Assembly (NCBI RefSeq): GCF_003704095.1
Contig: NW_020846747.1
Location: 434,001-498,000, forward strand
DNA from: Pocillopora damicornis
Lineage: Eukaryota
Length of the DNA stretch: 64,000 nucleotides
Reading direction: 5' to 3'
Part shown: positions 27,581-41,200 of the stretch, in pieces
How the letters are laid out: every line of letters starts with the position of its first letter
How positions within the stretch are numbered: the first letter of the stretch is position 1
Translations under genes and position numbers: made by a program
Notes under the pieces: generated by a model
What the model was told of the DNA's origin: nothing
The model's database searches: none
The model's input: only the letters and a program-made list of their open reading frames with translations

Positions 27581-28802
27581 TATACCGTCTTTACTCTTTT
27601 TATAACCATAAACAACATTATCTCTGCTGAGAATAACTGCAAGGGTCATTGACTGACCATGGGGACGAACAATGAACTGTTTACGTGCACTCTGCGGTGA
27701 CAAGACCAAGTTTCGCTCATCGCCGCTAAACGATGTCAATATTTTTTGATGATCTGGGGTTGAACTTTCCCCCCATAACCTTCGAAAAAAATAGATACTA
27801 GCCATTAAAAAGAAATGATGAATATTTGACCACAAAGCTTAAAGAAATTTGGATGGTTAATCACGGTTGTGGTTATTCTTCTCTATGTAGTCGTGACTAA
27901 TGATCGCGTGTCGTTGCTAAAACAAATCAGGCGTTTTGAAGATCGAACTAAGTGGCTCTATGGGAAAGTGATGCGAAATAGAAATCACTCGTAACACTAG
28001 AGCAAATCCTTTGATCTCATGAAAGAGCACATTTTATTTTTTGATGCGAATTGATGCTAAAATTCTAGTTACTATTGAGGACGTGAGTTGTTAGAGCCGA
28101 GATTCCATTCCTTCTTTTATTGGAACGGTTTACGTCATTAGTGACTTAGTTGCCATGGTAAATTGCTCCACTCAGGGGTAAAGCTAACCTCTCCCCTCCC
28201 CCTCCCCCGCAGAGTAGAGAAAAAAAACTGCAAGACTGTAAAGCATTGAACGCATCAGATAATCAAACAATGCGCAAACAGGAACTTATGCGATCAATTT
28301 AAATGAAAAAAGAATTTAATAGGACCCTGGAATGAGTCTGACACGAACTTGTTCATTCTAATTTTGTATTGCGTGACGGATATCGTGCGTTACGGTATTA
28401 TGCTATCATGTCATTTGATCGTTTCGTTTCAAATTTGATTGACAGCCTTAGCCACGCCTTTTGTTCTGGTATATGTTTTTTGACGATCTATGAAATAAAA
28501 TGTTTAAACGAAACTTTGGCCTTTGTACGAATTATCACATGCTGCATTGCAGAAGAAACTCTCCAGTTCATAGCTGGCTGAGTAAAAAAAATTAAACGAT
28601 AACATTTCATATTTAAAATAAAGGAACGATAATAGCTGCGAATAGAAAAGGTAAACCGAGACTGTAAAAGAAAAAGTCAGGTCCTACGCGCGCGCTTGAA
28701 CCAATGCATACTTACTCTGTTGTATGTTAGTCCCAACAAAACTCAAGTAGATCTTTCTTCATTATTGTATGCTTTTGTTCTCATTTGTCTTGCAGTTCCA
28801 AC

Positions 28803-30317
28803 ATGATCTTGGAGGCCGTTATCTCCATTTTTCTCCTCTCATTGGGGTGGTGGTTCTTTCTTGCCCCTGCGACGCCCAAAAATCTTCCCCCGGGTCCCCG
28901 TCCGTACCCTGTGATAGGCAATTTGACTCAGTTGGTAGGAAAATCGATTCACTTGGCCGTGACTGACCTCGCAAAGGAATATGGGAAGATCCTCACGCTA
29001 TACTTACCGGGAGGTCAGCGGTGTATCCTAATAAATTCCGTAGACCTAGCCCGTGAGGCCTTGCTGATCAAGAAGGATGATTTCGCTGGGAGGCCTCGAA
29101 CATTCATCGGAGATTTTCTCACACGAGAAGCTAAGGACATTTTCTTTGCGGATTTCTCAAAAACCATGATTTTGCAACGGAAGCTGGTTCATTCTGCTCT
29201 ACGCATGTACGGAAGCGGTCTCAAACAGCTAGAGGTGAGGATCTGCGATGAAGCAGGACGAATGTTAGATCGACTCTCCGCTCATCAAGGAAATGCGATC
29301 GATCCCAAAGATGACATCAGCCTAATGGTTTTAAACGTGATTTGCGCTGTTACTTATGGAGAAAGTTATGCACTCGACGACGATGAATTCCAGCGAATTA
29401 TAAAGTATAACGATCACTTCATTCGCCTTTTCAAAGGTTTTAACATTCTCGAAATGCTTCCATGGCTGCGGTTTTTTCCAATTGAAGAAAGTCGAATCCT
29501 TAGAGAGGCAAAAGAATTAAGAGACGCAGTCTTAGATACCAAGTACCACGAACACAAAAAGAAGTTTGAAGAAAGTGCGAACAAAAAAGACATAAAAATC
29601 CAAGATTTGACCGATGCGCTCTTAAAAGCTTTTTACGAAGCGCAAGAAGAAGACGGAAAAATTTCGCAGGTACTGACGGAGGACCATTTGGTAATGATAA
29701 TAAATGACGTATTCAACGCTGGCATTCAGTCCACTATAGCGACGTTGCTATGGTTACTAGCTTACATGGTTAATTACCCAGATATCCAATCGCGCGTCCA
29801 TGCAGAATTGGATGATGTCATTGGTCGTGATCGAAAACCGCGACTCGAAGATCGAGGTCGTCTTCCTTATTTGGAAAGTACCGTGGCAGAAGTGCTGCGT
29901 ATTGCAACCACCACCCCCTTATCGATCCCTCACAAGTCAACACGGAAGAGTTCGCTGGGGGGATATGACATCCCCAAGGATACAATGATGATGACAAATC
30001 TATGGGCGATTCATCACGATCCAAAGGAATGGGAAGATCCGGACGTGTTTAAACCCGAACGGTTTCTTGATGTTGAAGGAAACTTCTCGGTTTCAGGCCC
30101 CAATGGTTATCGAAGTTACCTGCCTTTCAGCGCCGGAAGAAGAGTGTGTTTAGGCGAGTCGCTGGCCAAGATAGAGCTGTTTCTAGTTACGTCCAGGCTT
30201 CTGCATCAGTTCAAGTTCGAGCCAGCACCAGAGACACAGCTTCCCGAGCTTTCTGGTATCGTGGGAGTCGTGCTTGTTCCCGAATCTTACAAAATTTGCA
30301 TAAAGAACCGGCACTAA
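28803..30317 (+). CDS. Cytochrome P450 (clan 2, CYP17/CYP1-like), intact, intronless CDS, 504 aa
   Basis: ATG at 28803 (MILEAVISIFLL..) follows acceptor TTGCAG; the ORF track begins 6 codons early at a non-ATG codon. Motifs: LPPGPRP, AGIQST I-helix, EVLR, FKPERF and heme motif FSAGRRVCLG. Confidence 0.97.
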   Translation: MILEAVISIFLLSLGWWFFLAPATPKNLPPGPRPYPVIGNLTQLVGKSIHLAVTDLAKEYGKILTLYLPGGQRCILINSVDLAREALLIKKDDFAGRPRTFIGDFLTREAKDIFFADFSKTMILQRKLVHSALRMYGSGLKQLEVRICDEAGRMLDRLSAHQGNAIDPKDDISLMVLNVICAVTYGESYALDDDEFQRIIKYNDHFIRLFKGFNILEMLPWLRFFPIEESRILREAKELRDAVLDTKYHEHKKKFEESANKKDIKIQDLTDALLKAFYEAQEEDGKISQVLTEDHLVMIINDVFNAGIQSTIATLLWLLAYMVNYPDIQSRVHAELDDVIGRDRKPRLEDRGRLPYLESTVAEVLRIATTTPLSIPHKSTRKSSLGGYDIPKDTMMMTNLWAIHHDPKEWEDPDVFKPERFLDVEGNFSVSGPNGYRSYLPFSAGRRVCLGESLAKIELFLVTSRLLHQFKFEPAPETQLPELSGIVGVVLVPESYKICIKNRH

Positions 30318-30797: not shown

Positions 30798-32258
30798 TTA
30801 TACTGAACACAGTGCTATGTCAAGGGAGAGAGCATTCAGAACGCACTTAAAAAATACGAGTGTTGCAAAGACGAAACTCGAAATATAAAAAGCTTGGAAA
30901 AGAGTATGTCTCGTAGTAGATTCGTCAATAATTGTGAGAAGCTCATTATAAGCTCCTCCAGATTGCTTGGCTAAGGGTAAAATATGCCCTCTTATGTCTT
31001 GAATGTAACTGATATACTCCTTTTTATTTCGTGAAAGATCATCTAGAAGGCCTTGCACGTGATTAAGCTCTGCTTTCGAAAGGTCACGCAACAGATTCCA
31101 ATGACTAATGAAGTAATGGGACAAGAATTTTTTGCTGTAAACCTCCCTCAGTTTGTTCACCATAAGTTCAAACAATGCGCCTAAGCGGTGATTGGCGAGG
31201 TCATGGTAATCAAGGCCGTTATCTGTCTCGGCAAGCCAAAGGAAAATTGTCTTTAAATAGTACGACGCTAAAATCTTTTTGTTTCCCAGTCTTGGTTTCA
31301 GATGTTTCTTGTAAGCATACCTCAACATGATGTAACACAGTTTCAAAGCGTGTTTGTCACTATGATACTGGAACAATATTCTCTCAGCTTTAGAGAATGA
31401 AAACCTCCAATCTAACTGGGAATTTTCAGAGGAACCTGATGGTTTGTATACCAAATGACAGCCACCTTTAGCAATTTTTTGTATCATTCCAGTGCTTAGA
31501 AGCCGGAAATCTCTGCTTTCTCGATTCAGCCATTCTACTGCGCTCCGAGGCCAACCAGAGAAACTCAAGGCGACAGCAATATCAATGACTCCCATGTAAC
31601 CATACCTTTGTGCATGAATTTCTTTTGCTCTCAATGTTATAGCCGGTTCATTCTGTATGACGTCGAAGTCGCCATCGTTAAAATTCTCTTGCGTGGCTCG
31701 AAGGAAATGACTGTAAATTGCACTTGCACTTACAAATTGCTGATTTGCTTTCTTCAAAACTTGGAATAATTCTGATCGTGAGTTTTTTATCCGTTGTACC
31801 ATTTCTTGCATTTGCACCCACACAAACCCAACAGGAGTACGGCTAACGTCAATGTCGTCTTCGCTAACACTCAGAATCTTTGGTGAAACCATTACATCGA
31901 TGTCTTGTTCGCTTCCTGTCACATCCACTGAGAAAAAGCCATAGCCCTCCATAACGCTACCACATTTCTCGATTGAGTATAAATCGTCATCTTTTCCCAT
32001 CACAGATGGAAGTAAGTCGAAATCCTCTCGGTAAAGATTCGATGCCAGTTGCTTTTGAATGAATTCATCGACTTTATAAGCCTTTCTGAGGCGGCTGTTC
32101 AAGGGATGTTCTGTAAATCGCTTGTACGCGAGCAACGCGATAAAGATGCATGCTCCACTGAACACAGACACATTTAAAACGTCAGTAAAGCTCAGGCGAC
32201 GAACAGTTGTCCCGTCCATGTCCAAGTTCTTCTCTTGTCGAGAAACACTAAGGAACAT
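30798..32258 (-). CDS. Mab21-domain nucleotidyltransferase / cGAS-like receptor (cGLR), intronless, with putative N- and C-terminal hydrophobic helices
   Basis: GSVMEG...DIDVM catalytic signature, third Asp in IDIAVAL, WPRSAVEW, GCHLVYK, WRFSFSKAE, SYYLKTIFLW and LSHYFISHWNLL, all typical of the Mab21/cGLR family. The start could be any of the first three Met codons. Confidence 0.9.
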   Translation of the reverse strand: MFLSVSRQEKNLDMDGTTVRRLSFTDVLNVSVFSGACIFIALLAYKRFTEHPLNSRLRKAYKVDEFIQKQLASNLYREDFDLLPSVMGKDDDLYSIEKCGSVMEGYGFFSVDVTGSEQDIDVMVSPKILSVSEDDIDVSRTPVGFVWVQMQEMVQRIKNSRSELFQVLKKANQQFVSASAIYSHFLRATQENFNDGDFDVIQNEPAITLRAKEIHAQRYGYMGVIDIAVALSFSGWPRSAVEWLNRESRDFRLLSTGMIQKIAKGGCHLVYKPSGSSENSQLDWRFSFSKAERILFQYHSDKHALKLCYIMLRYAYKKHLKPRLGNKKILASYYLKTIFLWLAETDNGLDYHDLANHRLGALFELMVNKLREVYSKKFLSHYFISHWNLLRDLSKAELNHVQGLLDDLSRNKKEYISYIQDIRGHILPLAKQSGGAYNELLTIIDESTTRHTLFQAFYISSFVFATLVFFKCVLNALSLDIALCSV

Positions 32259-33446
32259 TCACAAGATACTCTTGACGTACAGCTCTTACTTTCACTTCGG
32301 CTATGTTTATGTTATAAACCCGCAGTGGCCTGGGACTACTTCATACTCCGCGTTTAATGGCTAATGCAGGCGCAATCCAACACCTATAGCGATTGGTATG
32401 AAAGGAAAGTCTCTCTTCTTCTTTTAAAAACCTTCATCGCAATTTTGGATTATTCTTTTCGTGAGGCAGCTGATTTTGTAGAAATGTGCCCAGAAGCTGA
32501 CAGGTTCTTCGATTTTCCATTTGGGTATAGCTTGCACCGGCTATTAAACAGAAAAGTTTACAAACATCACTTAAATCTTTACGATTAATTTGTTCGTTTT
32601 TGCTGAGCGTGTGAGGTAGTTGGCGATGCTAAGACTGGCTGCCAGCTGAGAACTCTTGATATAAGTCACCAATTAGCATATAAAGGTTGTTTTTAAATTA
32701 AAACAGGCCACTTGGTTTACCTGAAAGCGAAGAACAACGTCGAAGAAAGTCGGGCATGAAAATTATTTTACAGAGCGTTATTCATGCAACAACAAAAAGT
32801 GAATTAAATTTTTTAAAAGATGGTAAAGTTTGCTTAGACGCCAAAAAATTTCAGTGAAAAATTGTAAAAGATATCAGAAATTATATATCTCAATAGAAAA
32901 ATGTATTTAAGCCAACAAATCGCTGATAGACACTGTAGTTTGAGAAATACAGAGTTTTAACCAAGAAATCATGCTTGCAGACGATTGGAAATAAAAGCTT
33001 AAAAAATGACTTGTTTGCAATATTGCCCTCAATGATTAAAATTTATTATGGCGATGCCATGGAGAAAAGAAATAAAAGAGGGTAGAGTGAAAAACGATTT
33101 ATATGGCGAATGAAAACCATATGCAAGATGTTGATTTTATTAACAGGAACCAAACGTGCCAGCCATATCTGATGAGCTTCATTTGCGTATGCTAATTTTA
33201 AAGTTTCTTTGTTTCGTTGATGTTTTGAAGGGTGAATCATTTTCTTTCTCGAGTTGGTTGTTTTTATGGTTTTCATTAAGCCTCTCGCGTAGGCAGGCGA
33301 TAGAGATTAAGCTGTTCCTTTTTCGAATATCGTGTGAATCCTTGAGAAGGCTGTGACTTGTTCAAAAAGCGGGCGAGCAGATGGAGGGAATTTCGAGAGC
33401 TCTGTGAAGAAACAAGTTTATTTTTGAGGAAAAACACCTGGGCCTG

Positions 33447-36400
33447 ATGGATGAGAGGTGAAGAGGAATTAGCATTTTTAAAATTTCGTTTTCAAAGTCT
33501 TGGAAAATGCCATACAGTTGCACTTTTATATTTCTGTGTGTTTTAACTTTTTATGCCAACAAATTCACCGCTTAGATGAGCAACCGCATTGGGTATCCAA
33601 AGACATGCTGACAATACTATAAACATTCTCGATGTTGAACTTAAAAAACGATAATACTTTCCCGAATTAATGTTTCGTACAATTTTTAACGAATTCGCAT
33701 AGTTGAGCGACTGCATTGAATATCCAAACATGCTAACAATACATCCTGCAACAATACTGTAAACATTCGCGTTGTCAAACTTTGAATGTATGGTAACTGG
33801 CAGGGGATGAATAAGGAAAAAAGTTTTAAAAAATTCGAGCCTGACCTANNNNNNNNNNNNNNNNNNNNNNNNNNNNNNNNNNNNNNNNNNNNNNNNNNNN
33901 NNNNNNNNNNNNNNNNNNNNNNNNNNNNNNNNNNNNNNNNNNNNNNNNTATGTCACGGTTCAACAAGAGAAATTCTGTAGCCTGAGTACTGTCAACAATG
34001 AGCCTCCTTTTTATGTCTTTCATGTAATAAAGGCATGCTGCAAATCAAAACTATATCTTTAAAGTTAAGTGCGTCGTGTTTAGCACTTAGATTCTAAAAT
34101 GAATGCGCTTTTCATTTTTACTTGTTGTCCCTTTTCAAGTGTCCTTCGTCACTCATTGGCTAAAATGTTGACAGGGGTCACGTGGCAAGTCAATATAGTC
34201 GTCCTGGTCTTGATTGAAGTGATCATCAACCTCGTCCTCATGCTGATGGAATTTAATGTTATCAAAGGTAATAAATGTTCTATTTATGATCGTAATAGGA
34301 CTGTATGGAGTCCTATTTGAATCCATAAATGAAGGGAAGAATAACAGACGACCTGCAAGGATCATATCCTCGCTTGGGATTTAACGACAGCAAAGGCGGA
34401 GGCTTGATTTATAATCACGCGTATGATTACGAACAGAATTGGACGACACAAAGTAATTAAGTATTATCAACTGAGTTGATAACGTGAATGAGCCACTGTA
34501 AAGAGTTTCAAGGCTGACGTTTCGAGCGTTAGCCCTTCGTCAGAGCGAGCGTAGGCCTTCTCGAAACGTCAGCCTTGAAACTCTTTACGGTGATCAATTT
34601 ACGTTATAAAATCAGTCGATAATACTTAATTCCCCTGTTCTACTCTCCCACCGAAGCAGCACCACAATTTCTTCAGAAACTAACCCCCTTTATTCATTGG
34701 ACGACACTAAGTCTAACTAAGTTTTTCTTTACCAAAAAATTTGCCTGTCGAAGAAAATGACGCTCAAAAATGACTTCTTAAAACATAGTCCAATTACAAG
34801 AATTACATGTAAACTGTCTTATTCGAGCTTAACTCGAGCAGTTAACAAACTAACCACGTTTAGGAAAACTATATAGTTTAATTTCGATCAGTGAGTCATT
34901 CTGCTGAGACCTAGGAAAGTTGTAGAAATTTTTTTATCTTTCTGAGCTTATCAGTTTACACACAAAAATTGGATCAATATCAGTATCTGGGCAACTGCCC
35001 ACCTACCCCTCCCCTAACTCAACAACAGTCACTTGACAACAAGTTAAGGTTAATGTTGGGTTAGGGAGGGATAGGTGGGCAGTTGCCCAGATATTGATAT
35101 TGATCCAAAAATTATTGGAGATATCATTTTAATAATGTATAACTACGGAGCTGGATAAAATTCTAGGTTCCTTCGTTTCCATTGAGAGTCTCAGCGTACT
35201 TACGATTTCGCACGAAGCTTAGGTCGAAGGGGATTCAACCGGGACATTCCCATGTTACTAAAGACGTAATTAATCCCAGGGGTATTCGAGGGCAATCCCT
35301 AAGATCGGCATGACATCCACACTGACGGATAGACGATACAGAAAATAAGAGGCTCTGTTCCTTCTTTAGACGAAACTCACGTGTCCCGGTATCTGCTTCA
35401 TTTTGTTGGCTTGTCCATCCTCGCCATCTTCGTGTTTGAGGTAAGCCTCAGCAGAGTTGTTTTTGAGTTTAAAAGTAGAAATAAGAAATAATAGGCATCT
35501 AGGGTATCGTGGACACCTTGTTGTTTCGTCAGATTACGCACAAGACTGGAAATTACTTGTTTAATATGTCTCAAGCGCGTCACGAAGATCCAACAAACCT
35601 TCGAGCCAATTCTGAACTTGGGATCGACTCACACATCTAACCCTGTTCCTGGCAAATTATGCATTCAATTTTGCTTAAAACTGGGAATTGACTGCTGCTC
35701 GATGGTATTTCAATAATTGTACGAGTTTCCACTTGCAGTTCTAGCGACCAACGAGGTAAAAAAATTATCGGCTAAAGATAGCAGAGTAGCGAGCGATTTT
35801 TAAGCCGGTCACTGAGAGTTAAGAATTTACAACTCTGTATCACTGGTTGAATTCACAAATTTGAATCTCAGGAGAAGTATACTTGGAGGTGTGCTTCTGA
35901 TCTCCAACATAGCGATAATCAATTAACGCATTGATAAAGAGTGACCTCCATTCTTCGCATTTGCTCATTTCTGTAGGTTTTTCTCAAGTTTTATGCAATG
36001 GGATGTGAGTACTTTATGAAAGAGAAACTGGAGGTGAGAAAATCCCTTTAACAACTACTGTGTTTAGACCTCAGCAAAAGCTGTTCTCTTCAGCGATTTA
36101 AACATACACTTTAGCTCATTTTAAACCTCATTTTCTTGTCTACAGTTATTTGATGCATTTATCGTGGTATCGGCGTTTGTAATCGAAATAGTGTTAAGGT
36201 GAGTGTGTGCAAATACGAGTATTCAAATCCTGTGTGCGGTATGTTTAATAAGTGAATCTGTCCAGCGTCCATTCTCCTCAAAGGAGTGAATAACTTTGAT
36301 CTGCACAATCTTTTTCTTTTCGAAGGAGAGGGGGGAGGAGGGGGAGGGGGGGCTTTGACCCTACACAAGTTTCATTATAATCCGGAACCCCGTCAACGTG

Positions 36401-37297
36401 AAATTCTCCATAGTGCAAAATAATTGCTTTTGAGTGGAGCCTGTTTAAATCCGGAATTTAACCAAAATTTTGGTTGATCCGTGATCAACAGTATTGTTCA
36501 AATGTACAATTTTTTCTCGTTCACTTTTCTCCTTCCAATCTTTTCTGTGAAATTTAAAAGAGCCTGTTCCCTTTTTCGTTAATTAATTCTTTATTTATTT
36601 TATTTTTCGATGTTTGTTGTTTTTTTCTTCAGCGTCATCCGTGCAAAGAAGGCATGGAAAGGCTTTGCTTTCATCATAGTTCTTCGGTTGTGGAGAGTTT
36701 TAAGGGTCATTGTCAGTAAGTATTGAGTGATGATTTTTATAAAGCTTGGATTGTAGTAGACATTCGCAACTATATATGTGTTGCTGATAATTCCCCTCAA
36801 GCCAGCGGAACAAACACAGAAAAATTATCAGCGACATTTGCCGAAGAGAACTATTGGGGTAAACTATCCATTAAAATTTCAAATTTCTTCAACAATTTCA
36901 CACAAATTGAAATTTCATCCTTTACTGATTTTCCTTGCCAATGGCCAATCCAGAGATATGAGTTGTTGTGAGGCTACTCTTTAAACTCGTCCCCGGAGCT
37001 TTCTCGGCCAGTATTTAAGATGGCGGCTACCTAGAAAAAATGGCCGCAATCTGTGAAAGACTTTTGCTAAGTTACCCTGATTGTTAGACCGATGCGAGTG
37101 AGAGAGTTATCCAAAACTTCTCAAGTCCTTGTCACCTAACCTTCAGTTTACATGATTCCTTTCTATCCTCAGTGGTATTCACCTTCAAAGAGGAATTGTA
37201 TGAGTTGATTGAAGATGACGTCGACGCTCCCAAACAAGAAATCAAAGACGAGGAAAACAAAGAGGCTGGGAAAAGTAAAGATGAACCAAAACACTGA
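33447..37297 (+). CDS. HVCN1: Voltage-gated proton channel Hv1-like (voltage-sensor-only) protein, spliced, about 175 aa
   Basis: Phase-consistent GT-AG exons: 34140-34267 (S1 WQVNIVVLVLIEVIINLVLMLMEFNVI), 35370-35440 (S2 LHFVGLSILAIFVFE), 35977-36033 (VFLKFYAMGCEYFMKEKLE), 36146-36198 (S3 LFDAFIVVSAFVIEIVL), 36633-36715 (S4 FIIVLRLWRVLRVI) and 37173-37297 (stop). The first coding exon is uncertain; the candidate is 33447-33457, and an N gap lies at 33849-33948. Confidence 0.88.
34513..34546 (-). ncRNA. Minimal type I hammerhead ribozyme-like motif inside a dispersed palindromic repeat
   Basis: Minus strand GCT-CTGACGA-AGGGCTAACGCTC-GAAAC-GTC-AGC: CUGANGA and GAAA core, GUC cleavage triplet, GCU/AGC stem I. 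It overlaps the left arm and loop of a hairpin with arms 34494-34526 and 34560-34592. Confidence 0.6.
34971..35106. mobile_element. Palindromic MITE
   Basis: GGATCAATATCAGTATCTGGGCAACTGCCCACCTA... and ...TAGGTGGGCAGTTGCCCAGATATTGATATTGATCC are terminal inverted repeats, with AAAAATT directly flanking both ends. A degenerate relative lies at about 39030-39140. Confidence 0.85.
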
Positions 37298-38282
37298 GGA
37301 GTTACAATTGAATTCAAACGGAAAAAAGTTGAAAATATAAGTGAAATAAACTTTCGCACTGCTACCGATTACCTTTGGGTGCTTTTCAATCAATTGCTGT
37401 AATACAGCCTGCTCCGTGTGTTCAATTGGTAAAACGAAGCGAAATAATAAACGGCGCAATAGTAGCCCTCTTCCGCTTCTAAGGCGCTTGGTTTTTCTAT
37501 ACTGAACCTCCAGAACAGGCAAGCTACGAACGAGACTATTCAAAACATCCAGTTGGAGCAAGGCGGGAAAATAACTATTATCAACTGAGTTTATAATGTA
37601 TCTTGGGCACCGTAGTAGATTATAGAGCTGAAGTTTCCAGTGTTAGCCCTGCGTCAGAGCAAAGTGAATGAGGATGCACACTTGATTTACCTACATTTAA
37701 ATTTTATTTCTGCATACACAGATACGTGTTTATGGTAAATCTTATTCGAACTAGACAACTACGTGATTTTAAAGGAGCAAAAGGAAAACATGCAAGTAAA
37801 AATTCATTTATTGATCCAAAATATCAATTTGAACAGCTAACACTACTTCTGCAATCTCTATATACATCTATCATTGGGTAAATCAATATGGCCGAGTTTC
37901 TTTCGTCCAATTAAAACAGAGAGATTATATATGCCATTTGCGAGTCGCTTTTCTTTACAACAGCCAGCGTCGCCACGAAAAATGGATTATGGTATGTTTA
38001 ACAGCAAAACGTAACGCTTGCAAAGTCGTTCGTTACCACTTTCATAGATTCCAGTTCTTCTCCCAGTGGATTCACCCTGATTGTGATACGCAAACTCTAC
38101 ACCCTCCAATTAACCTGAGAAGCACGGTAACATCCTTCTTTTTCAGGAAAGCAGCATTACATAATGACTTTCCGACCATTTCAGTGAATCACTCTCACCT
38201 TCGAAACGTGTACAGTGAGCCTTAATGCCCATGTATTCATGATCATCTCTTCAGCGCCAATTTTTCAATTTTCCGCAAGCGG

Positions 38283-41200
38283 TTATTTCTTCCCCCTTCT
38301 CCGGGCCGCTGTGCGAACCCTTGATCTTGCCGTCAAGTTGCTGCCTGCCCCTTGCGGAGTGCTCGGCGCCCCAAATGCTGGTGCAGGTGTGGGTGCGGCA
38401 AAACGACTTCCCGACGCACCACCTGGGGCGAAGTTGAAACCCCCACTGGGCGCAGGTGTCGCGGGCACAGCTATGAAAAAAAAAGGATGGTGAAAAAATT
38501 ACAATAGATTTCTACACGACTGCGAATTTTAATGGAGCTCAGAAAATTAGGGGTTAAAATTACAATGCGACTTTCTACTACTTAATATAAAACTCCTTTC
38601 TCCATGCAATCAAGGGGGAGGAAATTACTGGCATGAACTGAAGTGGGGAGGGTGAGGGGGAGGGGGGTAAGGTACTTTTCCCCAAACCCCCGTAGCTTCA
38701 TCTGGGGCTCTGCCGGCTGTGAAAAATCAAAGGGTGGGAACCCCGGAAGTCCTGATATACTTACCCGCAGGTGGAGCTGTTGCTTGGCCAAACTGCCCGA
38801 AGCTACTGTTACCCGCTGAAGAGCCTGGAAAAAAAAAAGGCAATGAAAATTCAGTGAAACAGGGTAAGTGAAATTGCATTCGAAGTTATGGAAATTCAGA
38901 AGACGAAGAGAAGGTTTAAGAGCAGATGACCAGACAATGAAAGGAAACGTCTTTAAAACCATGCCAACTTTTGACAGAGTTTCGCTTAAAAAAAAGAACA
39001 TAAGGAAACTAACTAACAAAAGCACAATCATTCTCTGAATGAGAAACTGCGCACCTGCCCCTCCCCTAACACAACAATAACCCTAACTTGTTATCAGCTG
39101 ATTATTTTGGGTTGGGGGAGGGGTAGCAACGCATTTGCTCACATGTTAGCATTGATAAAATTTTCCACTATTCCCAGATCTTACCAAATTGAAATCCTCC
39201 TGTTTTGTTCGCAGCGCCACTGAAATTAAAACCCCCGGGTGTTGGGTTATTTGCCGTCGCATTTGCATTGAAACTAAATCCACTAGAAGCCGCAGCATTC
39301 TGGGAAGGCGCTGCTCCAAAGGTGTTCTGGGCACCGGCACTGTTTCCAAACCCATTGAAAGGGGACTTGGAAGCGTTTTGCGACGTATTTGCAGCAAAAG
39401 TGAACGGAGATGATTTCTGGCTAGGAGCTTGTCCAAAAGCACCTTGGGTAGTTTTTTGGTTTGGCTGAGTTCCAAAGTTAAACTGTGTCGATTGGGTACC
39501 AAAAGCATTTTGGGCACTACTTTGATTTGGATTCGGTCCAAATACATTTTGATTCGCCTGGTTTCCGAAAATATTTTGTGTTGTTTTCTGCTGTGAACCA
39601 AAAGTATTTTGCAAATGCTGAGCACCCAAACCACTTTGAGGAGTCTTTTGACTTGCGTTTAGAGAACTGTTCGCGTTTTGCGCTCCAAACGTATTTGAAG
39701 AAGCTGGCTGGTTTTGCTGTTGCACTCCAAAGGCACCATGGGTAGGATTCGCTCCAAACGCACTCTGGGAAGCATTCTGGCCAAATGTGTTCTGGGTAAA
39801 CGGACTTTGTGTGAAACCTGAAGTTTGAGGAGTGTTTTGTGAAGGCTTGCCCCCAAAGCCATTCGCACCGAAGGCAGAACCAAACGAAGTTTGACCTTGT
39901 TGTCCTGTTACAGGTTGCATGTTACTTACACCAAACGTGCCTTTGTTTTGGGTTGTTGATGCAAGGGAATTCTGAGGCGCCGTGGCACTCTGCCCAAATA
40001 CATTTGTCGATGGAATCGCAGTTAGAGTAGAGCTATTTTGCGTAGTTTCGGTTCGTTTTCCAAACGGACTTTGCAATGAAGCAGCTACATTGCCACTTGC
40101 CAACGACCCAGAAGTTTGGGAAGTATTTTGTCCTAAAAAGAAAGTACTTGAAGAATTCACAGAGGTCGTAACCTGAGTATTTTGTGTTGACTTCTCACCA
40201 AAGACAATCTTTGTACTATTTGAAGCTGAAGAATTGAACCGTGATTGCCCATTGGTTGAAGCGTTGGACGGCGGCATCCCAGATACGCTCGACGAAGAAA
40301 CTGTGGAGAAACTAAACCCAGCTTTTTGGGAAGAAGTATTATTTGTGTTCAAAGTTGGTGGGTTAGTTGTTGCCGGCTTAGCGAAGGGCGACGCCCCAGA
40401 TGAGGGAAATGACGAAAGCTGGAATCCTGAGGAAACTGGTCCTGTTGTAACAGTCGAACTTTGCGCTGGGTTTGCTTGTGACTGGACAGGAGCAATTGAT
40501 GAGCTTGTGGGAGCAGCCTTTCCCTGTTGTGAAGTAGGAATTTTTATTCCTTCACCTGTCAATGCCGTAGACAGCCCGGGTGTACCTGACGGTTTAGAAC
40601 ACAAATCAACTCCTGGTCGCTGTTGGGACAGTAACGCACGCAAAGTAGAACTTTGGGATTGCGTAGCAGTGCCACTGCCGTGCATTACGGGATTGGAACT
40701 AGAAACACTTGATGAAGGGACCTGCTGATCACTTGTGGTCCTTCGAGGATCTCCCAAACCAAGGGTTGGGGCGATAAGGCTCTGGGCAGTAGTGGTAGTT
40801 ATTGTCCCTCTGCTTGTCACAACACCTGCAGTAGGGACCTTGAATAACGAAGCTGAGGTCGAAGTAGCCGCAGCTGAAGAAACCGTTGTCGTATCTGACA
40901 AAAGAACATAAACGAGAATCCTAACTCATGGCATTTATTCCACTTACTTTTGCGGAATTTTCGTTTAAAGAAAAGAAGGAGCACTATCTTGAGTTGAGGT
41001 CGTTAAGTTTCTCGTGTAAGGAGTGGAGAAGAAATTTGTCATTTAACGAGGGAAAACCAGCGATCGACACCTCGTCACGCACAGGGTGTTGGTGACAAAG
41101 GAGCGAGTCATGTGTGTGACTTGTGAGAAGCAAAATAACTCGTACGTTAACGGTGGAAGTGGAGAAGATACCATGGTTTCCATGAACAGTCTCGCTTTAA

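What the first reader, a model, noticed from the sequence alone, without database searches (positions are those of the whole stretch)
33447..37297. Hidden Hv1-like proton channel with Glu at the selectivity-filter position and a non-canonical C-terminus
Seen: six short exons splice in phase into S1-S4 with the Hv signature RLWRVLR. By manual alignment to human Hv1, D112 is E (codon 34216-34218), E119 is L, D185 is E and N214 is V, while H140, F150, E153 and D174 are kept. The tail is only about 40 aa, acidic and proline-interrupted, and does not look like the dimerising coiled coil. Established: an acidic residue at position 112 is required for proton selectivity and Asp is the norm. Inference: a divergent, possibly monomeric Hv paralog with altered gating, relevant to pH control if the host is a calcifying coral.
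Basis: partly seen in the sequence, partly recalled or inferred. Interest (0 to 1): 0.75.

Follow-up and report, generated by a model that had tools for sequence, protein, structure and literature searches.

The report
Coral second proton-channel gene (HvCN1.2)
This is an intact, expressed coral gene for the second, sea-anemone-and-coral-specific voltage-gated proton channel paralog that was already described in 2021, so it is real but not new, although nobody has yet recorded its currents.

Summary
All are bounded by AG/GT and in phase, and contigs from 4 of 4 polyA RNA runs (3 studies) splice them the same way. The start ATG at 33447 is also used. However, transcripts carry about 111 more letters between 33457 and 34140 that lie on neither readable side of the N gap (33849-33948). 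One 37-codon N-terminal exon is therefore missing from the assembly, and the protein has about 212 residues, not about 175.

The residue calls hold: D112E, E119L, D123E, D185E, H193K and N214V, with H140, F150, E153, D174 and RLWRVLR kept.

This pattern is exactly that of HvCN1.2, the Hexacorallia-only paralog published by Capasso et al. 2021 (PMC7941709). [quoted passage not shown] The same genome also holds the canonical paralog (Asp filter, RIVNG, coiled-coil exon) on another contig.

A natural Glu filter is known and proton-selective in a stick insect.

The short acidic tail without a heptad coiled coil is conserved in 16 of 16 clade members. That contradicts a remark in the 2021 paper and is the only partly fresh point. 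It does not show a monomer.

No electrophysiology of this clade was found in print. The verdict is already known, with moderate-to-low interest.

The parts
33447..33457 (+). Coding part of the start exon (ATG plus 8 bases, donor GT at 33458-33459). The 5' UTR runs upstream past 33300.
   Evidence: An in-frame stop lies at 33405-33407 and this is the first ATG after it. RNA contigs cover 33300-33457 and end at this donor in 4 of 4 runs. Orthologs P0016 and P0015 start with the same first residues.
33849..33948 (.). Assembly gap. It most likely hides a coding exon of about 111 nt (37 codons of the N-terminus).
   Evidence: The joint 33457>34138/34139 carries 109-110 letters that lie nowhere on the stretch, in X1, X2 and X11. 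tblastn of the 41-residue N-terminus of P0016, P0015 and P0006 finds nothing in the readable window. The letters were not read or filled.
34140..34267 (+). S1 exon.
34216..34218 (+). GAA codon, giving Glu at the position of human Asp112 (the selectivity filter).
   Evidence: Exon alignment to 3wkv_A. Glu in 16 of 16 clade members and in 14 of 14 hits.
35370..35440 (+). Exon for the S1-S2 loop and first part of S2 (His140, Phe150, Glu153).
35977..36033 (+). Exon for the end of S2 and the S2-S3 loop (Lys157, Glu171).
36146..36198 (+). S3 exon (Asp174; Glu at the Asp185 position).
36633..36715 (+). Exon for the S3-S4 loop and S4 (Lys at the His193 position; RLWRVLR; Val at the Asn214 position).
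37173..37297 (+). Last coding exon. It holds the end of S4, the conserved F-K-E-E-L-Y-E-L-I-E-D-D motif, an acidic Pro-interrupted tail and the stop codon.
   Evidence: The motif is invariant at F, Y, E, L and I in 16 of 16 members.
37298..37500 (+). 3' UTR, at least to 37500.
   Evidence: RNA contigs run on from 37173 to 37500 and beyond in 4 of 4 runs (table 8).

Best explanation

Shown:
- It is an intact gene of eight coding exons. One of those exons is lost in the assembly gap.
- It is transcribed and spliced as modelled.
- It encodes a protein of about 212 residues consisting only of a voltage-sensor domain (S1-S4).
- That domain has the Hv S4 signature R-L-W-R-x-x-R, the charge-transfer centre (Phe150, Glu153, Asp174) and an acidic residue at the filter site.

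Inferred:
- It works as a depolarisation-activated, proton-selective pathway through the sensor itself, with Glu pairing with S4 arginines as Asp112 does in Hv1.
- Only His140 of the four Zn2+ ligands is kept, so it should be less sensitive to Zn2+.
- Its short tail cannot form the long dimerising coiled coil, so any dimer would have to rest on the transmembrane contacts. Gating would then probably be faster and less cooperative than in the canonical paralog.
For: Gene structure and expression are.

Searched alone against all solved structures, the S1 exon hits only Hv1 (3wkv_A, E 0.11). The S4 exon hits only 3wkv_A and 5oqk_A (E 4 and 4.6).

The natural near-identical protein P0016 (212 aa) aligns to the window exon by exon at 77-98% identity per piece; the lower values come from pieces that run past exon ends, and within the six exons I count four residue differences by eye. 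Its relatives carry Pfam Ion_trans over the S1-S4 part only, in 16 of 16.

Ortholog P0011 hits Hv1 structures at E 6e-18 and 2.5e-17. The next best hits are Cav at 2e-9 and VSP at 2e-3.

The key-site table gives, for all 16 clade members: E112, L119, E185, H140, F150, D174, R205, W207, R208 and R211.

The pattern equals that printed for spiHvCN1.2: E112, E119L, D123E, H193K, with R205, R208, R211, H140, E153 and D174 kept (PMC7941709).

In the tree the clade of 16 forms one branch with support 100/97.

The same genome has the canonical paralog on contig C3972, with introns at about the same five places. No second HvCN1.2-type locus was found.

The D112E mutant and natural Glu channels keep proton selectivity (PMC10377628, passages; PMC7941709, section 13).
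Against: No current has been recorded for any member of this clade. The searches found only the 2021 paper.

The clade sits on a long stem (1.12 changes per column). Its place relative to the canonical Hv clade is unresolved.

Asn214 is replaced by hydrophobic or small residues in 16 of 16 members, and Asp185 by Glu in 16 of 16. The effects of these changes on conduction are unknown.

TMEM266, the closest vertebrate relative of Hv1, senses voltage but conducts no protons (PMC6392501), so homology alone does not prove conduction.

Each exon on its own gave no Pfam hit and only weak E-values against solved structures.

The window's own joined protein was never searched, by rule. P0016 stands in for it.
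Confidence: 0.8

Rival explanations
1. It is a voltage sensor that no longer conducts protons. It would be a TMEM266-like sensing module that regulates something else through its conserved N-terminus or acidic tail.
For: The stem is long and several pore-lining sites have changed in 16 of 16 members (E112, L119, E185, no Asn214). The cytoplasmic motifs are strongly conserved, which suggests partner binding. NCBI calls the Actinia ortholog 'transmembrane protein 266-like'. TMEM266 shows that such sensors exist (PMC6392501).
Against: The sites that distinguish TMEM266 are not present here. TMEM266 has non-polar V111 in S1 and M185 in S3; this protein has Glu at both. It also lacks the extra Lys before R3, the coiled coil and the roughly 250 further residues. 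TMEM266 is reported from vertebrates only. An acidic filter residue plus Trp207 and three Arg are the set that conducts in every Hv tested, according to the review.
Confidence: 0.15
2. The short protein of about 175 residues that the reader modelled (start exon joined directly to the S1 exon) is a real isoform.
For: The skip keeps the frame, because the hidden exon is about 111 nt. The Nematostella ortholog named isoform X2 (P0011, 179 aa) lacks this N-terminal stretch.
Against: None of the 4 RNA runs shows a direct 33457>34140 joint. Three of 4 show the joint with 109-110 letters between. Contigs drop rare variants, so a minor isoform cannot be excluded.
Confidence: 0.1
3. It is a channel of an internal acidic compartment rather than of the plasma membrane. 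The invariant Y-E-L-I plus acidic cluster just after S4 would act as a tyrosine-type sorting signal.
For: Y, E, L and I are invariant in 16 of 16 members and are followed by an acidic run. There is no coiled coil. Expression is enriched in the oral, symbiont-rich fraction in Stylophora (PMC7941709). That Y-x-x-hydrophobic is a sorting consensus is recalled knowledge and comes from no call.
Against: The motif may simply be the amphipathic continuation of the S4 helix. No localisation data exist. The clade also occurs in Nematostella, which by my recall has no algal symbionts.
Confidence: 0.12

Closest known systems
spiHvCN1.2 of Stylophora pistillata and the HvCN1.2 group of Hexacorallia (Capasso et al. 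2021, PMC7941709)
   Same: The diagnostic residue pattern is the same: E112, E119L, D123E, H193K, with R205, R208, R211, H140, E153 and D174 kept. It coexists with a canonical HvCN1.1 gene in the same genome. Named relatives come only from stony corals and sea anemones.
   Different: It comes from another coral genome. The paper lists a C-terminal coiled coil among the hallmarks of both paralogs, whereas my heptad test finds none in 16 of 16 members.
Canonical Hv1/HVCN1 (human Hv1; coral AmHv1, PMC8346283)
   Same: It is a voltage-sensor-only protein with RxWRxxR, Phe150, Glu153, Asp174, His140 and an acidic filter residue. The intron places match those of the canonical paralog of this genome.
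   Different: It has Glu rather than Asp at positions 112 and 185. It has Leu at 119 and no Asn214-Gly215. The N-terminus is 41 residues long. The acidic tail is 42-52 residues with a Pro 19-27 residues after R3, in place of a heptad coiled coil.
EtHv1 of the stick insect Extatosoma tiaratum, and other natural Glu-filter Hv channels (PMC10377628)
   Same: They have a natural Glu at the filter site. EtHv1 is proton selective.
   Different: They arose independently in insects, horseshoe crab and Balamuthia. The review does not describe these channels as lacking the coiled coil.
kHv1 (Karlodinium) and Phaeodactylum Hv
   Same: No coiled coil is predicted at the C-terminus (PMC10377628).
   Different: They are unicellular protists with an Asp filter. 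[quoted passage not shown]
TMEM266 (HVRP1)
   Same: It has an Hv1-like S1-S4 domain. NCBI's name for the Actinia ortholog points to it.
   Different: TMEM266 has non-polar residues at the S1 and S3 acidic sites, an extra Lys in S4, a coiled coil and about 250 more residues. It is reported from vertebrates only and conducts no protons.

Membership tests
Voltage-gated proton channel family (Hv/HVCN1) | Voltage-sensor domain S1-S4 only, with no pore domain and no enzyme domain | tested here: met
   The stop codon comes 44 residues after the third S4 arginine. Pfam Ion_trans matches only profile positions 6-108 of 241 in P0016, and it is the only family matched by all 16 members.
Voltage-gated proton channel family (Hv/HVCN1) | S4 signature RxWRxxR with the Trp | tested here: met
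   RLWRVLR is in exon 36633-36715. It is present in 16 of 16 clade members and in 37 of 40 canonical rows; two fungal rows have Lys and one has Met at R3.
Voltage-gated proton channel family (Hv/HVCN1) | Acidic residue in mid-S1 (human Asp112) | tested here: met
   Glu at codon 34216-34218. Asp is the norm, in 38 of 40 canonical rows, and Glu is found in 16 of 16 clade members.
Voltage-gated proton channel family (Hv/HVCN1) | Charge-transfer centre Phe150, Glu153, Asp174 | tested here: met
Voltage-gated proton channel family (Hv/HVCN1) | Closest solved structures are Hv1 | tested here: met
   The S1 and S4 exons hit only 3wkv_A and 5oqk_A (weak E-values). Ortholog P0011 hits them at E 6e-18 and 2.5e-17, at least 8 orders of magnitude ahead of any other chain.
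Voltage-gated proton channel family (Hv/HVCN1) | C-terminal dimerising coiled coil | tested here: not met
   The Pro-free run after the end of S4 is 11-19 residues in 16 of 16 members, against 33-74 in 39 canonical rows. A heptad a/d score of at least 0.6 in 21-residue windows is reached by 0 of 16 members against 36 of 39 canonical rows (my own crude measure). The Pfam coiled-coil model PF16799 was no use as a control: it was matched by 0 of 20 invertebrate canonical rows. The feature is usual for the family but not universal.
Voltage-gated proton channel family (Hv/HVCN1) | Voltage- and delta-pH-gated proton-selective current | not testable with these tools
   This needs patch clamp. None was found in print for this clade.
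HvCN1.2 (Hexacorallia paralog, Capasso 2021) | Residue pattern E112, L119, E123, K193 with H140, E153, D174 and R205/R208/R211 kept | tested here: met
   compared with the text read.
HvCN1.2 (Hexacorallia paralog, Capasso 2021) | Forms one clade apart from canonical Hv, alongside a canonical paralog in the same genome | tested here: met
   The clade of 16 has support 100/97, with P0016 standing in for the window. The canonical gene is on C3972. The window is the only HvCN1.2-type locus found.
TMEM266 | Non-polar residues at the S1 (V111) and S3 (M185) sites, Lys before R3, a coiled coil and about 250 further residues | tested here: not met
   This protein has Glu at both sites, Leu before R3, and ends 44 residues after R3 (compared with PMC6392501). 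No TMEM266 sequence could be obtained for a tree.
Voltage-sensing phosphatase (VSP/TPTE) | Phosphatase domain after S4, no S4 Trp, no S1 acidic filter residue | tested here: not met
   There is no room for a domain after S4. Trp and Glu are both present. VSP chains score E 2e-3 and TPTE2 8e-4, against 6e-18 for Hv1.

The most novel reading that the evidence does not exclude
HvCN1.2 would be the first animal proton-channel clade built without the dimerising coiled coil. It also carries a doubly lengthened acidic pair (Glu112 and Glu185) and a hydrophobic residue in place of Asn214. Together with its invariant Y-E-L-I acidic tail and juxtamembrane Cys-Cys, it could be a fast, non-cooperative, Zn-insensitive proton pathway. 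It might be targeted to an internal acidic compartment such as the symbiosome or a cnidarian-specific organelle, rather than being a plasma-membrane acid extruder.
Probability: 0.15. Interest if true: 0.7.

Novelty: already known. Interest (0 to 1): 0.3.

Why it matters
Corals must move protons for calcification, symbiosis and pH homeostasis. Only the canonical coral Hv1 has been recorded electrically.

The second paralog is conserved across stony corals and sea anemones. Across 16 members, 43 alignment columns are invariant. It has a natural Glu filter, a degraded Zn2+ site and no coiled coil. It is therefore a ready-made natural experiment on selectivity, Zn2+ block and subunit cooperativity.

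For this scan, the main value is a corrected gene model, with an exon lost in an assembly gap, and the demonstration that the finding repeats published work.

Tried and rejected
Pfam on single exons gave nothing, because the pieces are too short.

My first six translate calls used coordinates one base off for five exons (wrong frames). I corrected them.

Pfam PF16799 was meant as a formal coiled-coil test. It failed as a control, matching 0 of 20 invertebrate canonical Hv rows, so I wrote a crude heptad measure instead. One search stopped with an error at the last row, P0086, and repeats it in full.

I retried neither.

No TMEM266 or VSP sequence could be brought into the tree.

Scleractinian HvCN1.1 proteins did not appear. 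I used the canonical locus of the own genome, exon by exon, instead.

The idea of a mis-spliced or dead gene was rejected on the RNA contigs. The idea of a link to calcification was rejected on the published distribution and oral enrichment.

The supplementary files of PMC7941709 (transcript table, coiled-coil or topology predictions) and of PMC10377628 (alignments) were closed. They may hold the exon count, the N-terminus and a coiled-coil prediction for spiHvCN1.2.
Full report
**What is in the sequence**

On the + strand, six short open pieces lie at 34140-34267, 35370-35440, 35977-36033, 36146-36198, 36633-36715 and 37173-37297. Each is preceded by AG and followed by GT, and the last ends in TGA at 37295-37297. 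Their phases fit one reading frame.

Translated one at a time, they give S1, S2 (two exons), S3, the S3-S4 loop with S4 (RLWRVLR), and a 40-codon acidic tail.

My first translate calls (3-7) were one base off. One search gives the right frames.

**Gap test, done first**

The N gap at 33849-33948 lies between a small start exon and the S1 exon. The start exon has its ATG at 33447, an in-frame stop upstream at 33405-33407 and a GT donor at 33458.

I laid Logan contigs of four polyA RNA runs from three studies on 33300-37500.
- In X1 and X2 the joint from 33457 to 34138 carries 109 letters that lie on neither side.
- In X11 the joint from 33457 to 34139 carries 110 such letters.
- In X6 the contigs break inside that stretch.
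- None of the 4 runs joins 33457 directly to 34140.

Counting the one or two letters that the aligner could place on either side, the transcript holds about 111 letters (37 codons) absent from the readable sequence.

Orthologous proteins from other corals (P0016, P0015, P0006) have a 41-residue N-terminus. Only its first residues (the start exon) and its last are encoded in the readable window. tblastn with word size 2 finds the rest nowhere in the 64 kb.

The two sides of the gap are therefore not continuous. One in-frame coding exon is missing at or near the gap.

Summing the exons gives 11+111+128+71+57+53+83+125 = 639 nt. That is 212 residues plus a stop, the same length as P0016. I did not read, fetch or fill the missing letters.

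**Splicing and expression**

The joints 34267>35370, 35440>35977, 36198>36633 and 36715>37173 are seen as GT..AG skips in 4 of 4 runs. The joint 36033>36146 is seen in 3 of 4, with a one-letter variant in X11.

The pieces on the S1 exon carry no differing letters in X1, X2 and X6, so these transcripts come from this species or a very close one. X11 carries A>G at 34193, which turns Asn into Ser, the residue found in P0016.

Contigs cannot give expression levels, starts or ends.

**What it is**

Following the rule to search a spliced model exon by exon, I never joined the exons.
- Alone, the S1 exon (42 residues) hits one chain among all solved structures: the mouse Hv1 chimera 3wkv_A (E 0.11).
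- The S4 exon (27 residues) hits only 3wkv_A and human Hv1 5oqk_A (E 4 and 4.6). These scores are weak singly but agree and are colinear.
- Pfam finds nothing on single exons.

A full scan of 1.84 billion representative proteins with the S1 exon gave 14 hits at E up to 0.001. All 14 have Glu at the filter site. Most are unspliced ORF fragments.

Two of those hits were spliced proteins, P0011 (179 aa) and P0006 (214 aa); P0005 (177 aa) looks like an unspliced ORF. Word searches started from P0011 and from an alignment. These returned:
- P0016 (212 aa, from a 917-nt Logan contig), which aligns to the window exon by exon at 77-98% identity per piece. The lower values come from pieces that run past exon ends, and within the six exons I count four residue differences by eye.
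- Named orthologs: "voltage-gated hydrogen channel 1" of Desmophyllum pertusum, Nematostella vectensis (isoform X2) and Exaiptasia diaphana.
- A hypothetical protein of Oculina patagonica, an unnamed product of Porites lobata, and "transmembrane protein 266-like isoform X2" of Actinia tenebrosa.

All 16 full-length members carry Pfam Ion_trans over the S1-S4 part only. P0011 hits Hv1 structures at E 6e-18 and 2.5e-17. Cav channels follow at 2e-9 and voltage-sensing phosphatases at about 1e-3.

**Key sites**

Human numbering was taken from the alignment printed and anchored on a reptile Hv1. The table covers 16 clade members and 40 canonical Hv rows.

| Position (human) | Clade (16 rows) | Canonical (40 rows) |
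|---|---|---|
| 112 | Glu 16/16 | Asp 38/40; the two lamprey rows have Glu |
| 119 | Leu 16/16 | Glu 32/40 |
| 123 | Glu 12/16 | Asp 35/40 |
| 185 | Glu 16/16 | Asp 37/40 |
| 193 | Lys 14/16 | varied; Asp 15/40, His 2/40 |
| 214 | Asn 0/16 | Asn 35/40 |

His140, Phe150, Lys157, Glu171, Asp174, Arg205, Trp207, Arg208 and Arg211 are kept in 16 of 16 clade members. The window's own exons show the same residues, with Val at position 214.

**Already published**

Capasso et al. 2021 (BMC Mol Cell Biol, PMC7941709; I read the abstract, sections 7 and 13, and passages of 8 and 14) report the following.
- spiHvCN1.2 carries E112, E119L, D123E and H193K, and keeps R205, R208, R211, H140, E153 and D174.
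- It shares 35% identity with spiHvCN1.1.
- The authors argue that Glu keeps proton specificity and that Zn2+ sensitivity should be lower.

That is the pattern seen here.

A 2023 review (PMC10377628, passages) adds three points. A natural Glu filter exists in stick and gladiator insects, in large Limulus channels and in Balamuthia. EtHv1 with Glu is proton selective. The review mentions only Acropora Hv1 for corals.

Full-text searches for "HvCN1.2" and for "voltage-gated proton channel" with "Hexacorallia" find only the 2021 paper. I therefore found no recording of this clade's currents in that library.

**Paralogy within this genome**

A search of the window's own assembly with the canonical Nematostella Hv1 (P0112) finds a separate gene on contig C3972. 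It has an Asp filter, a Glu and an Asp at the next two sites, RLWRVTRIVNG, and a heptad-rich last exon.

Judged by the ends of the tblastn pieces (within a residue or two), its five introns inside the sensor lie at the same places as those of the window's gene. That fits an old duplication of an intron-bearing gene.

A search with P0011 finds HvCN1.2-type exons only in the window.

**Tree**

The tree has 57 rows, 226 columns, the LG+C20+F+G4 model and bacterial Nav-type channels as outgroup.
- The 16 HvCN1.2 rows form one branch (100/97) on a stem of 1.12.
- Inside it, the stony corals form one group (100/99). Nematostella branches next (100/92) and the other two anemones (Exaiptasia and Actinia, 100/89) lie outside that, so the anemones do not form one group.
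- The other Hv rows, including fungi, form a group of 37 (90/86).
- The order of these two groups and a mollusc big-loop pair is unresolved, and long-branch effects are likely.

On features, TMEM266 is excluded. Papp et al. 2019 (PMC6392501, passages) describe non-polar V111 and M185, a Lys before R3, a coiled coil, about 250 more residues, a vertebrate-only distribution and no proton current. VSP is excluded by the stop 44 residues after R3 and by the scores.

**The tail**

After the third arginine the clade has 42-52 residues, against a median of 82 in 39 canonical rows.

Leaving out the eight residues that still belong to S4, the Pro-free run is 11-19 residues in 16 of 16 members, against 33-74 in canonical rows.

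My crude heptad score is the fraction of a/d positions that are Leu, Ile, Val or Met in the best Pro-free window. It reaches 0.6 in 21-residue windows in 0 of 16 members, against 36 of 39 canonical rows.

It disagrees with Capasso et al., who list the coiled coil among the hallmarks of both paralogs.

The 2023 review names only two protist channels as lacking a predicted coil.

A missing coil does not make a monomer. Human and coral Hv1 without the C-terminus still give FRET and native-gel dimers (PMC13546843, passages).

The tail is not junk. F, Y, E, L and I of the F-K-E-E-x-Y-E-L-I motif are invariant in 16 of 16 members. By recalled knowledge, Y-x-x-hydrophobic followed by an acidic cluster resembles a sorting signal. 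That is an idea only.

**How it most likely works**

Shown: this is an intact, expressed gene coding only for a voltage-sensor domain, and it has the full Hv signature.

Inferred: depolarisation moves S4, and Glu112 pairs with an S4 arginine to form the proton-selective constriction, as Asp112 does. Glu at this site is compatible with selectivity in the mutants and natural channels reported in the papers above.

Also inferred: Zn2+ block is weak, since only one of four ligands is kept, and gating is less cooperative because there is no coil. The hydrophobic residue at position 214 and Glu at 185 may change conductance or voltage range in ways I cannot predict.

I give 0.9 that this is the HvCN1.2 ortholog and about 0.65 that it is a proton-selective voltage-gated channel. 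The stated 0.8 is for the explanation as a whole.

**Verdict**

The gene family member, its Glu filter and its altered Zn2+ site are in print, and orthologs are annotated. The conserved lack of a coiled coil in an animal Hv clade, and the lack of any recording, keep some interest for channel specialists.

Noticed in passing
window 34448-34638 and 34969-35108 (intron after the S1 exon): There are two hairpin-type inverted repeats, with arms of 79 nt (85% complementary) and 45 nt (96%). RNA-run contigs pile up on them to word depths in the thousands, with many loose ends. They look like high-copy MITE-like elements that are transcribed elsewhere in the genome.
   Followed up: partly
G000:C3972:21034-24664 (L005 3041-6664): This is the canonical Hv1 paralog of the same genome. 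It has an Asp filter, RLWRVTRIVNG and a heptad-rich last exon, and its five introns lie at about the same places as in the window's gene.
   Followed up: partly
proteins P0158 (Lampetra fluviatilis) and P0166 (Lethenteron reissneri): The lamprey Hv1-like proteins have Glu at the filter site, Asn at the His140 site and His at the Lys157 site. This is a vertebrate case of a natural Glu filter, and it does not appear in the passages I read of the 2023 review.
   Followed up: no
protein P0011 (Nematostella vectensis isoform X2): This ortholog lacks the N-terminal stretch that the exon hidden in the gap encodes in corals. That part may be alternatively spliced in some species.
   Followed up: no
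window 37173-37500 and beyond: RNA contigs of 5314 nt (X2) and 4461 nt (X6) run on for more than 3.5 kb past 37500 (table 8). This is either a very long 3' UTR or contigs merged with the convergent FG-repeat, nucleoporin-like ORF on the minus strand at 39168-40901.
   Followed up: no
window 28785-30317 (+) and 30798-32258 (-): The neighbours are single-exon ORFs. One is a cytochrome-P450-like protein of 510 aa. The other is a 486-aa ORF that another note of this scan calls cGAS-like. The latter's 5' end lies about 1.2 kb upstream of the proton-channel start codon, so the two genes are divergent.
   Followed up: no
window 34193: Run X11 reads G where the window has A. This turns Asn into Ser in S1, the residue of P0016 and P0001. 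It is a polymorphism or a sister species in that sample.
   Followed up: no
alignment A3, N-terminal region of the orthologs: A conserved basic stretch and a Cys-Cys pair sit directly before S1 in the coral orthologs. By recall, this could be a juxtamembrane palmitoylation site. In this window that part is encoded by the exon lost in the gap.
   Followed up: no
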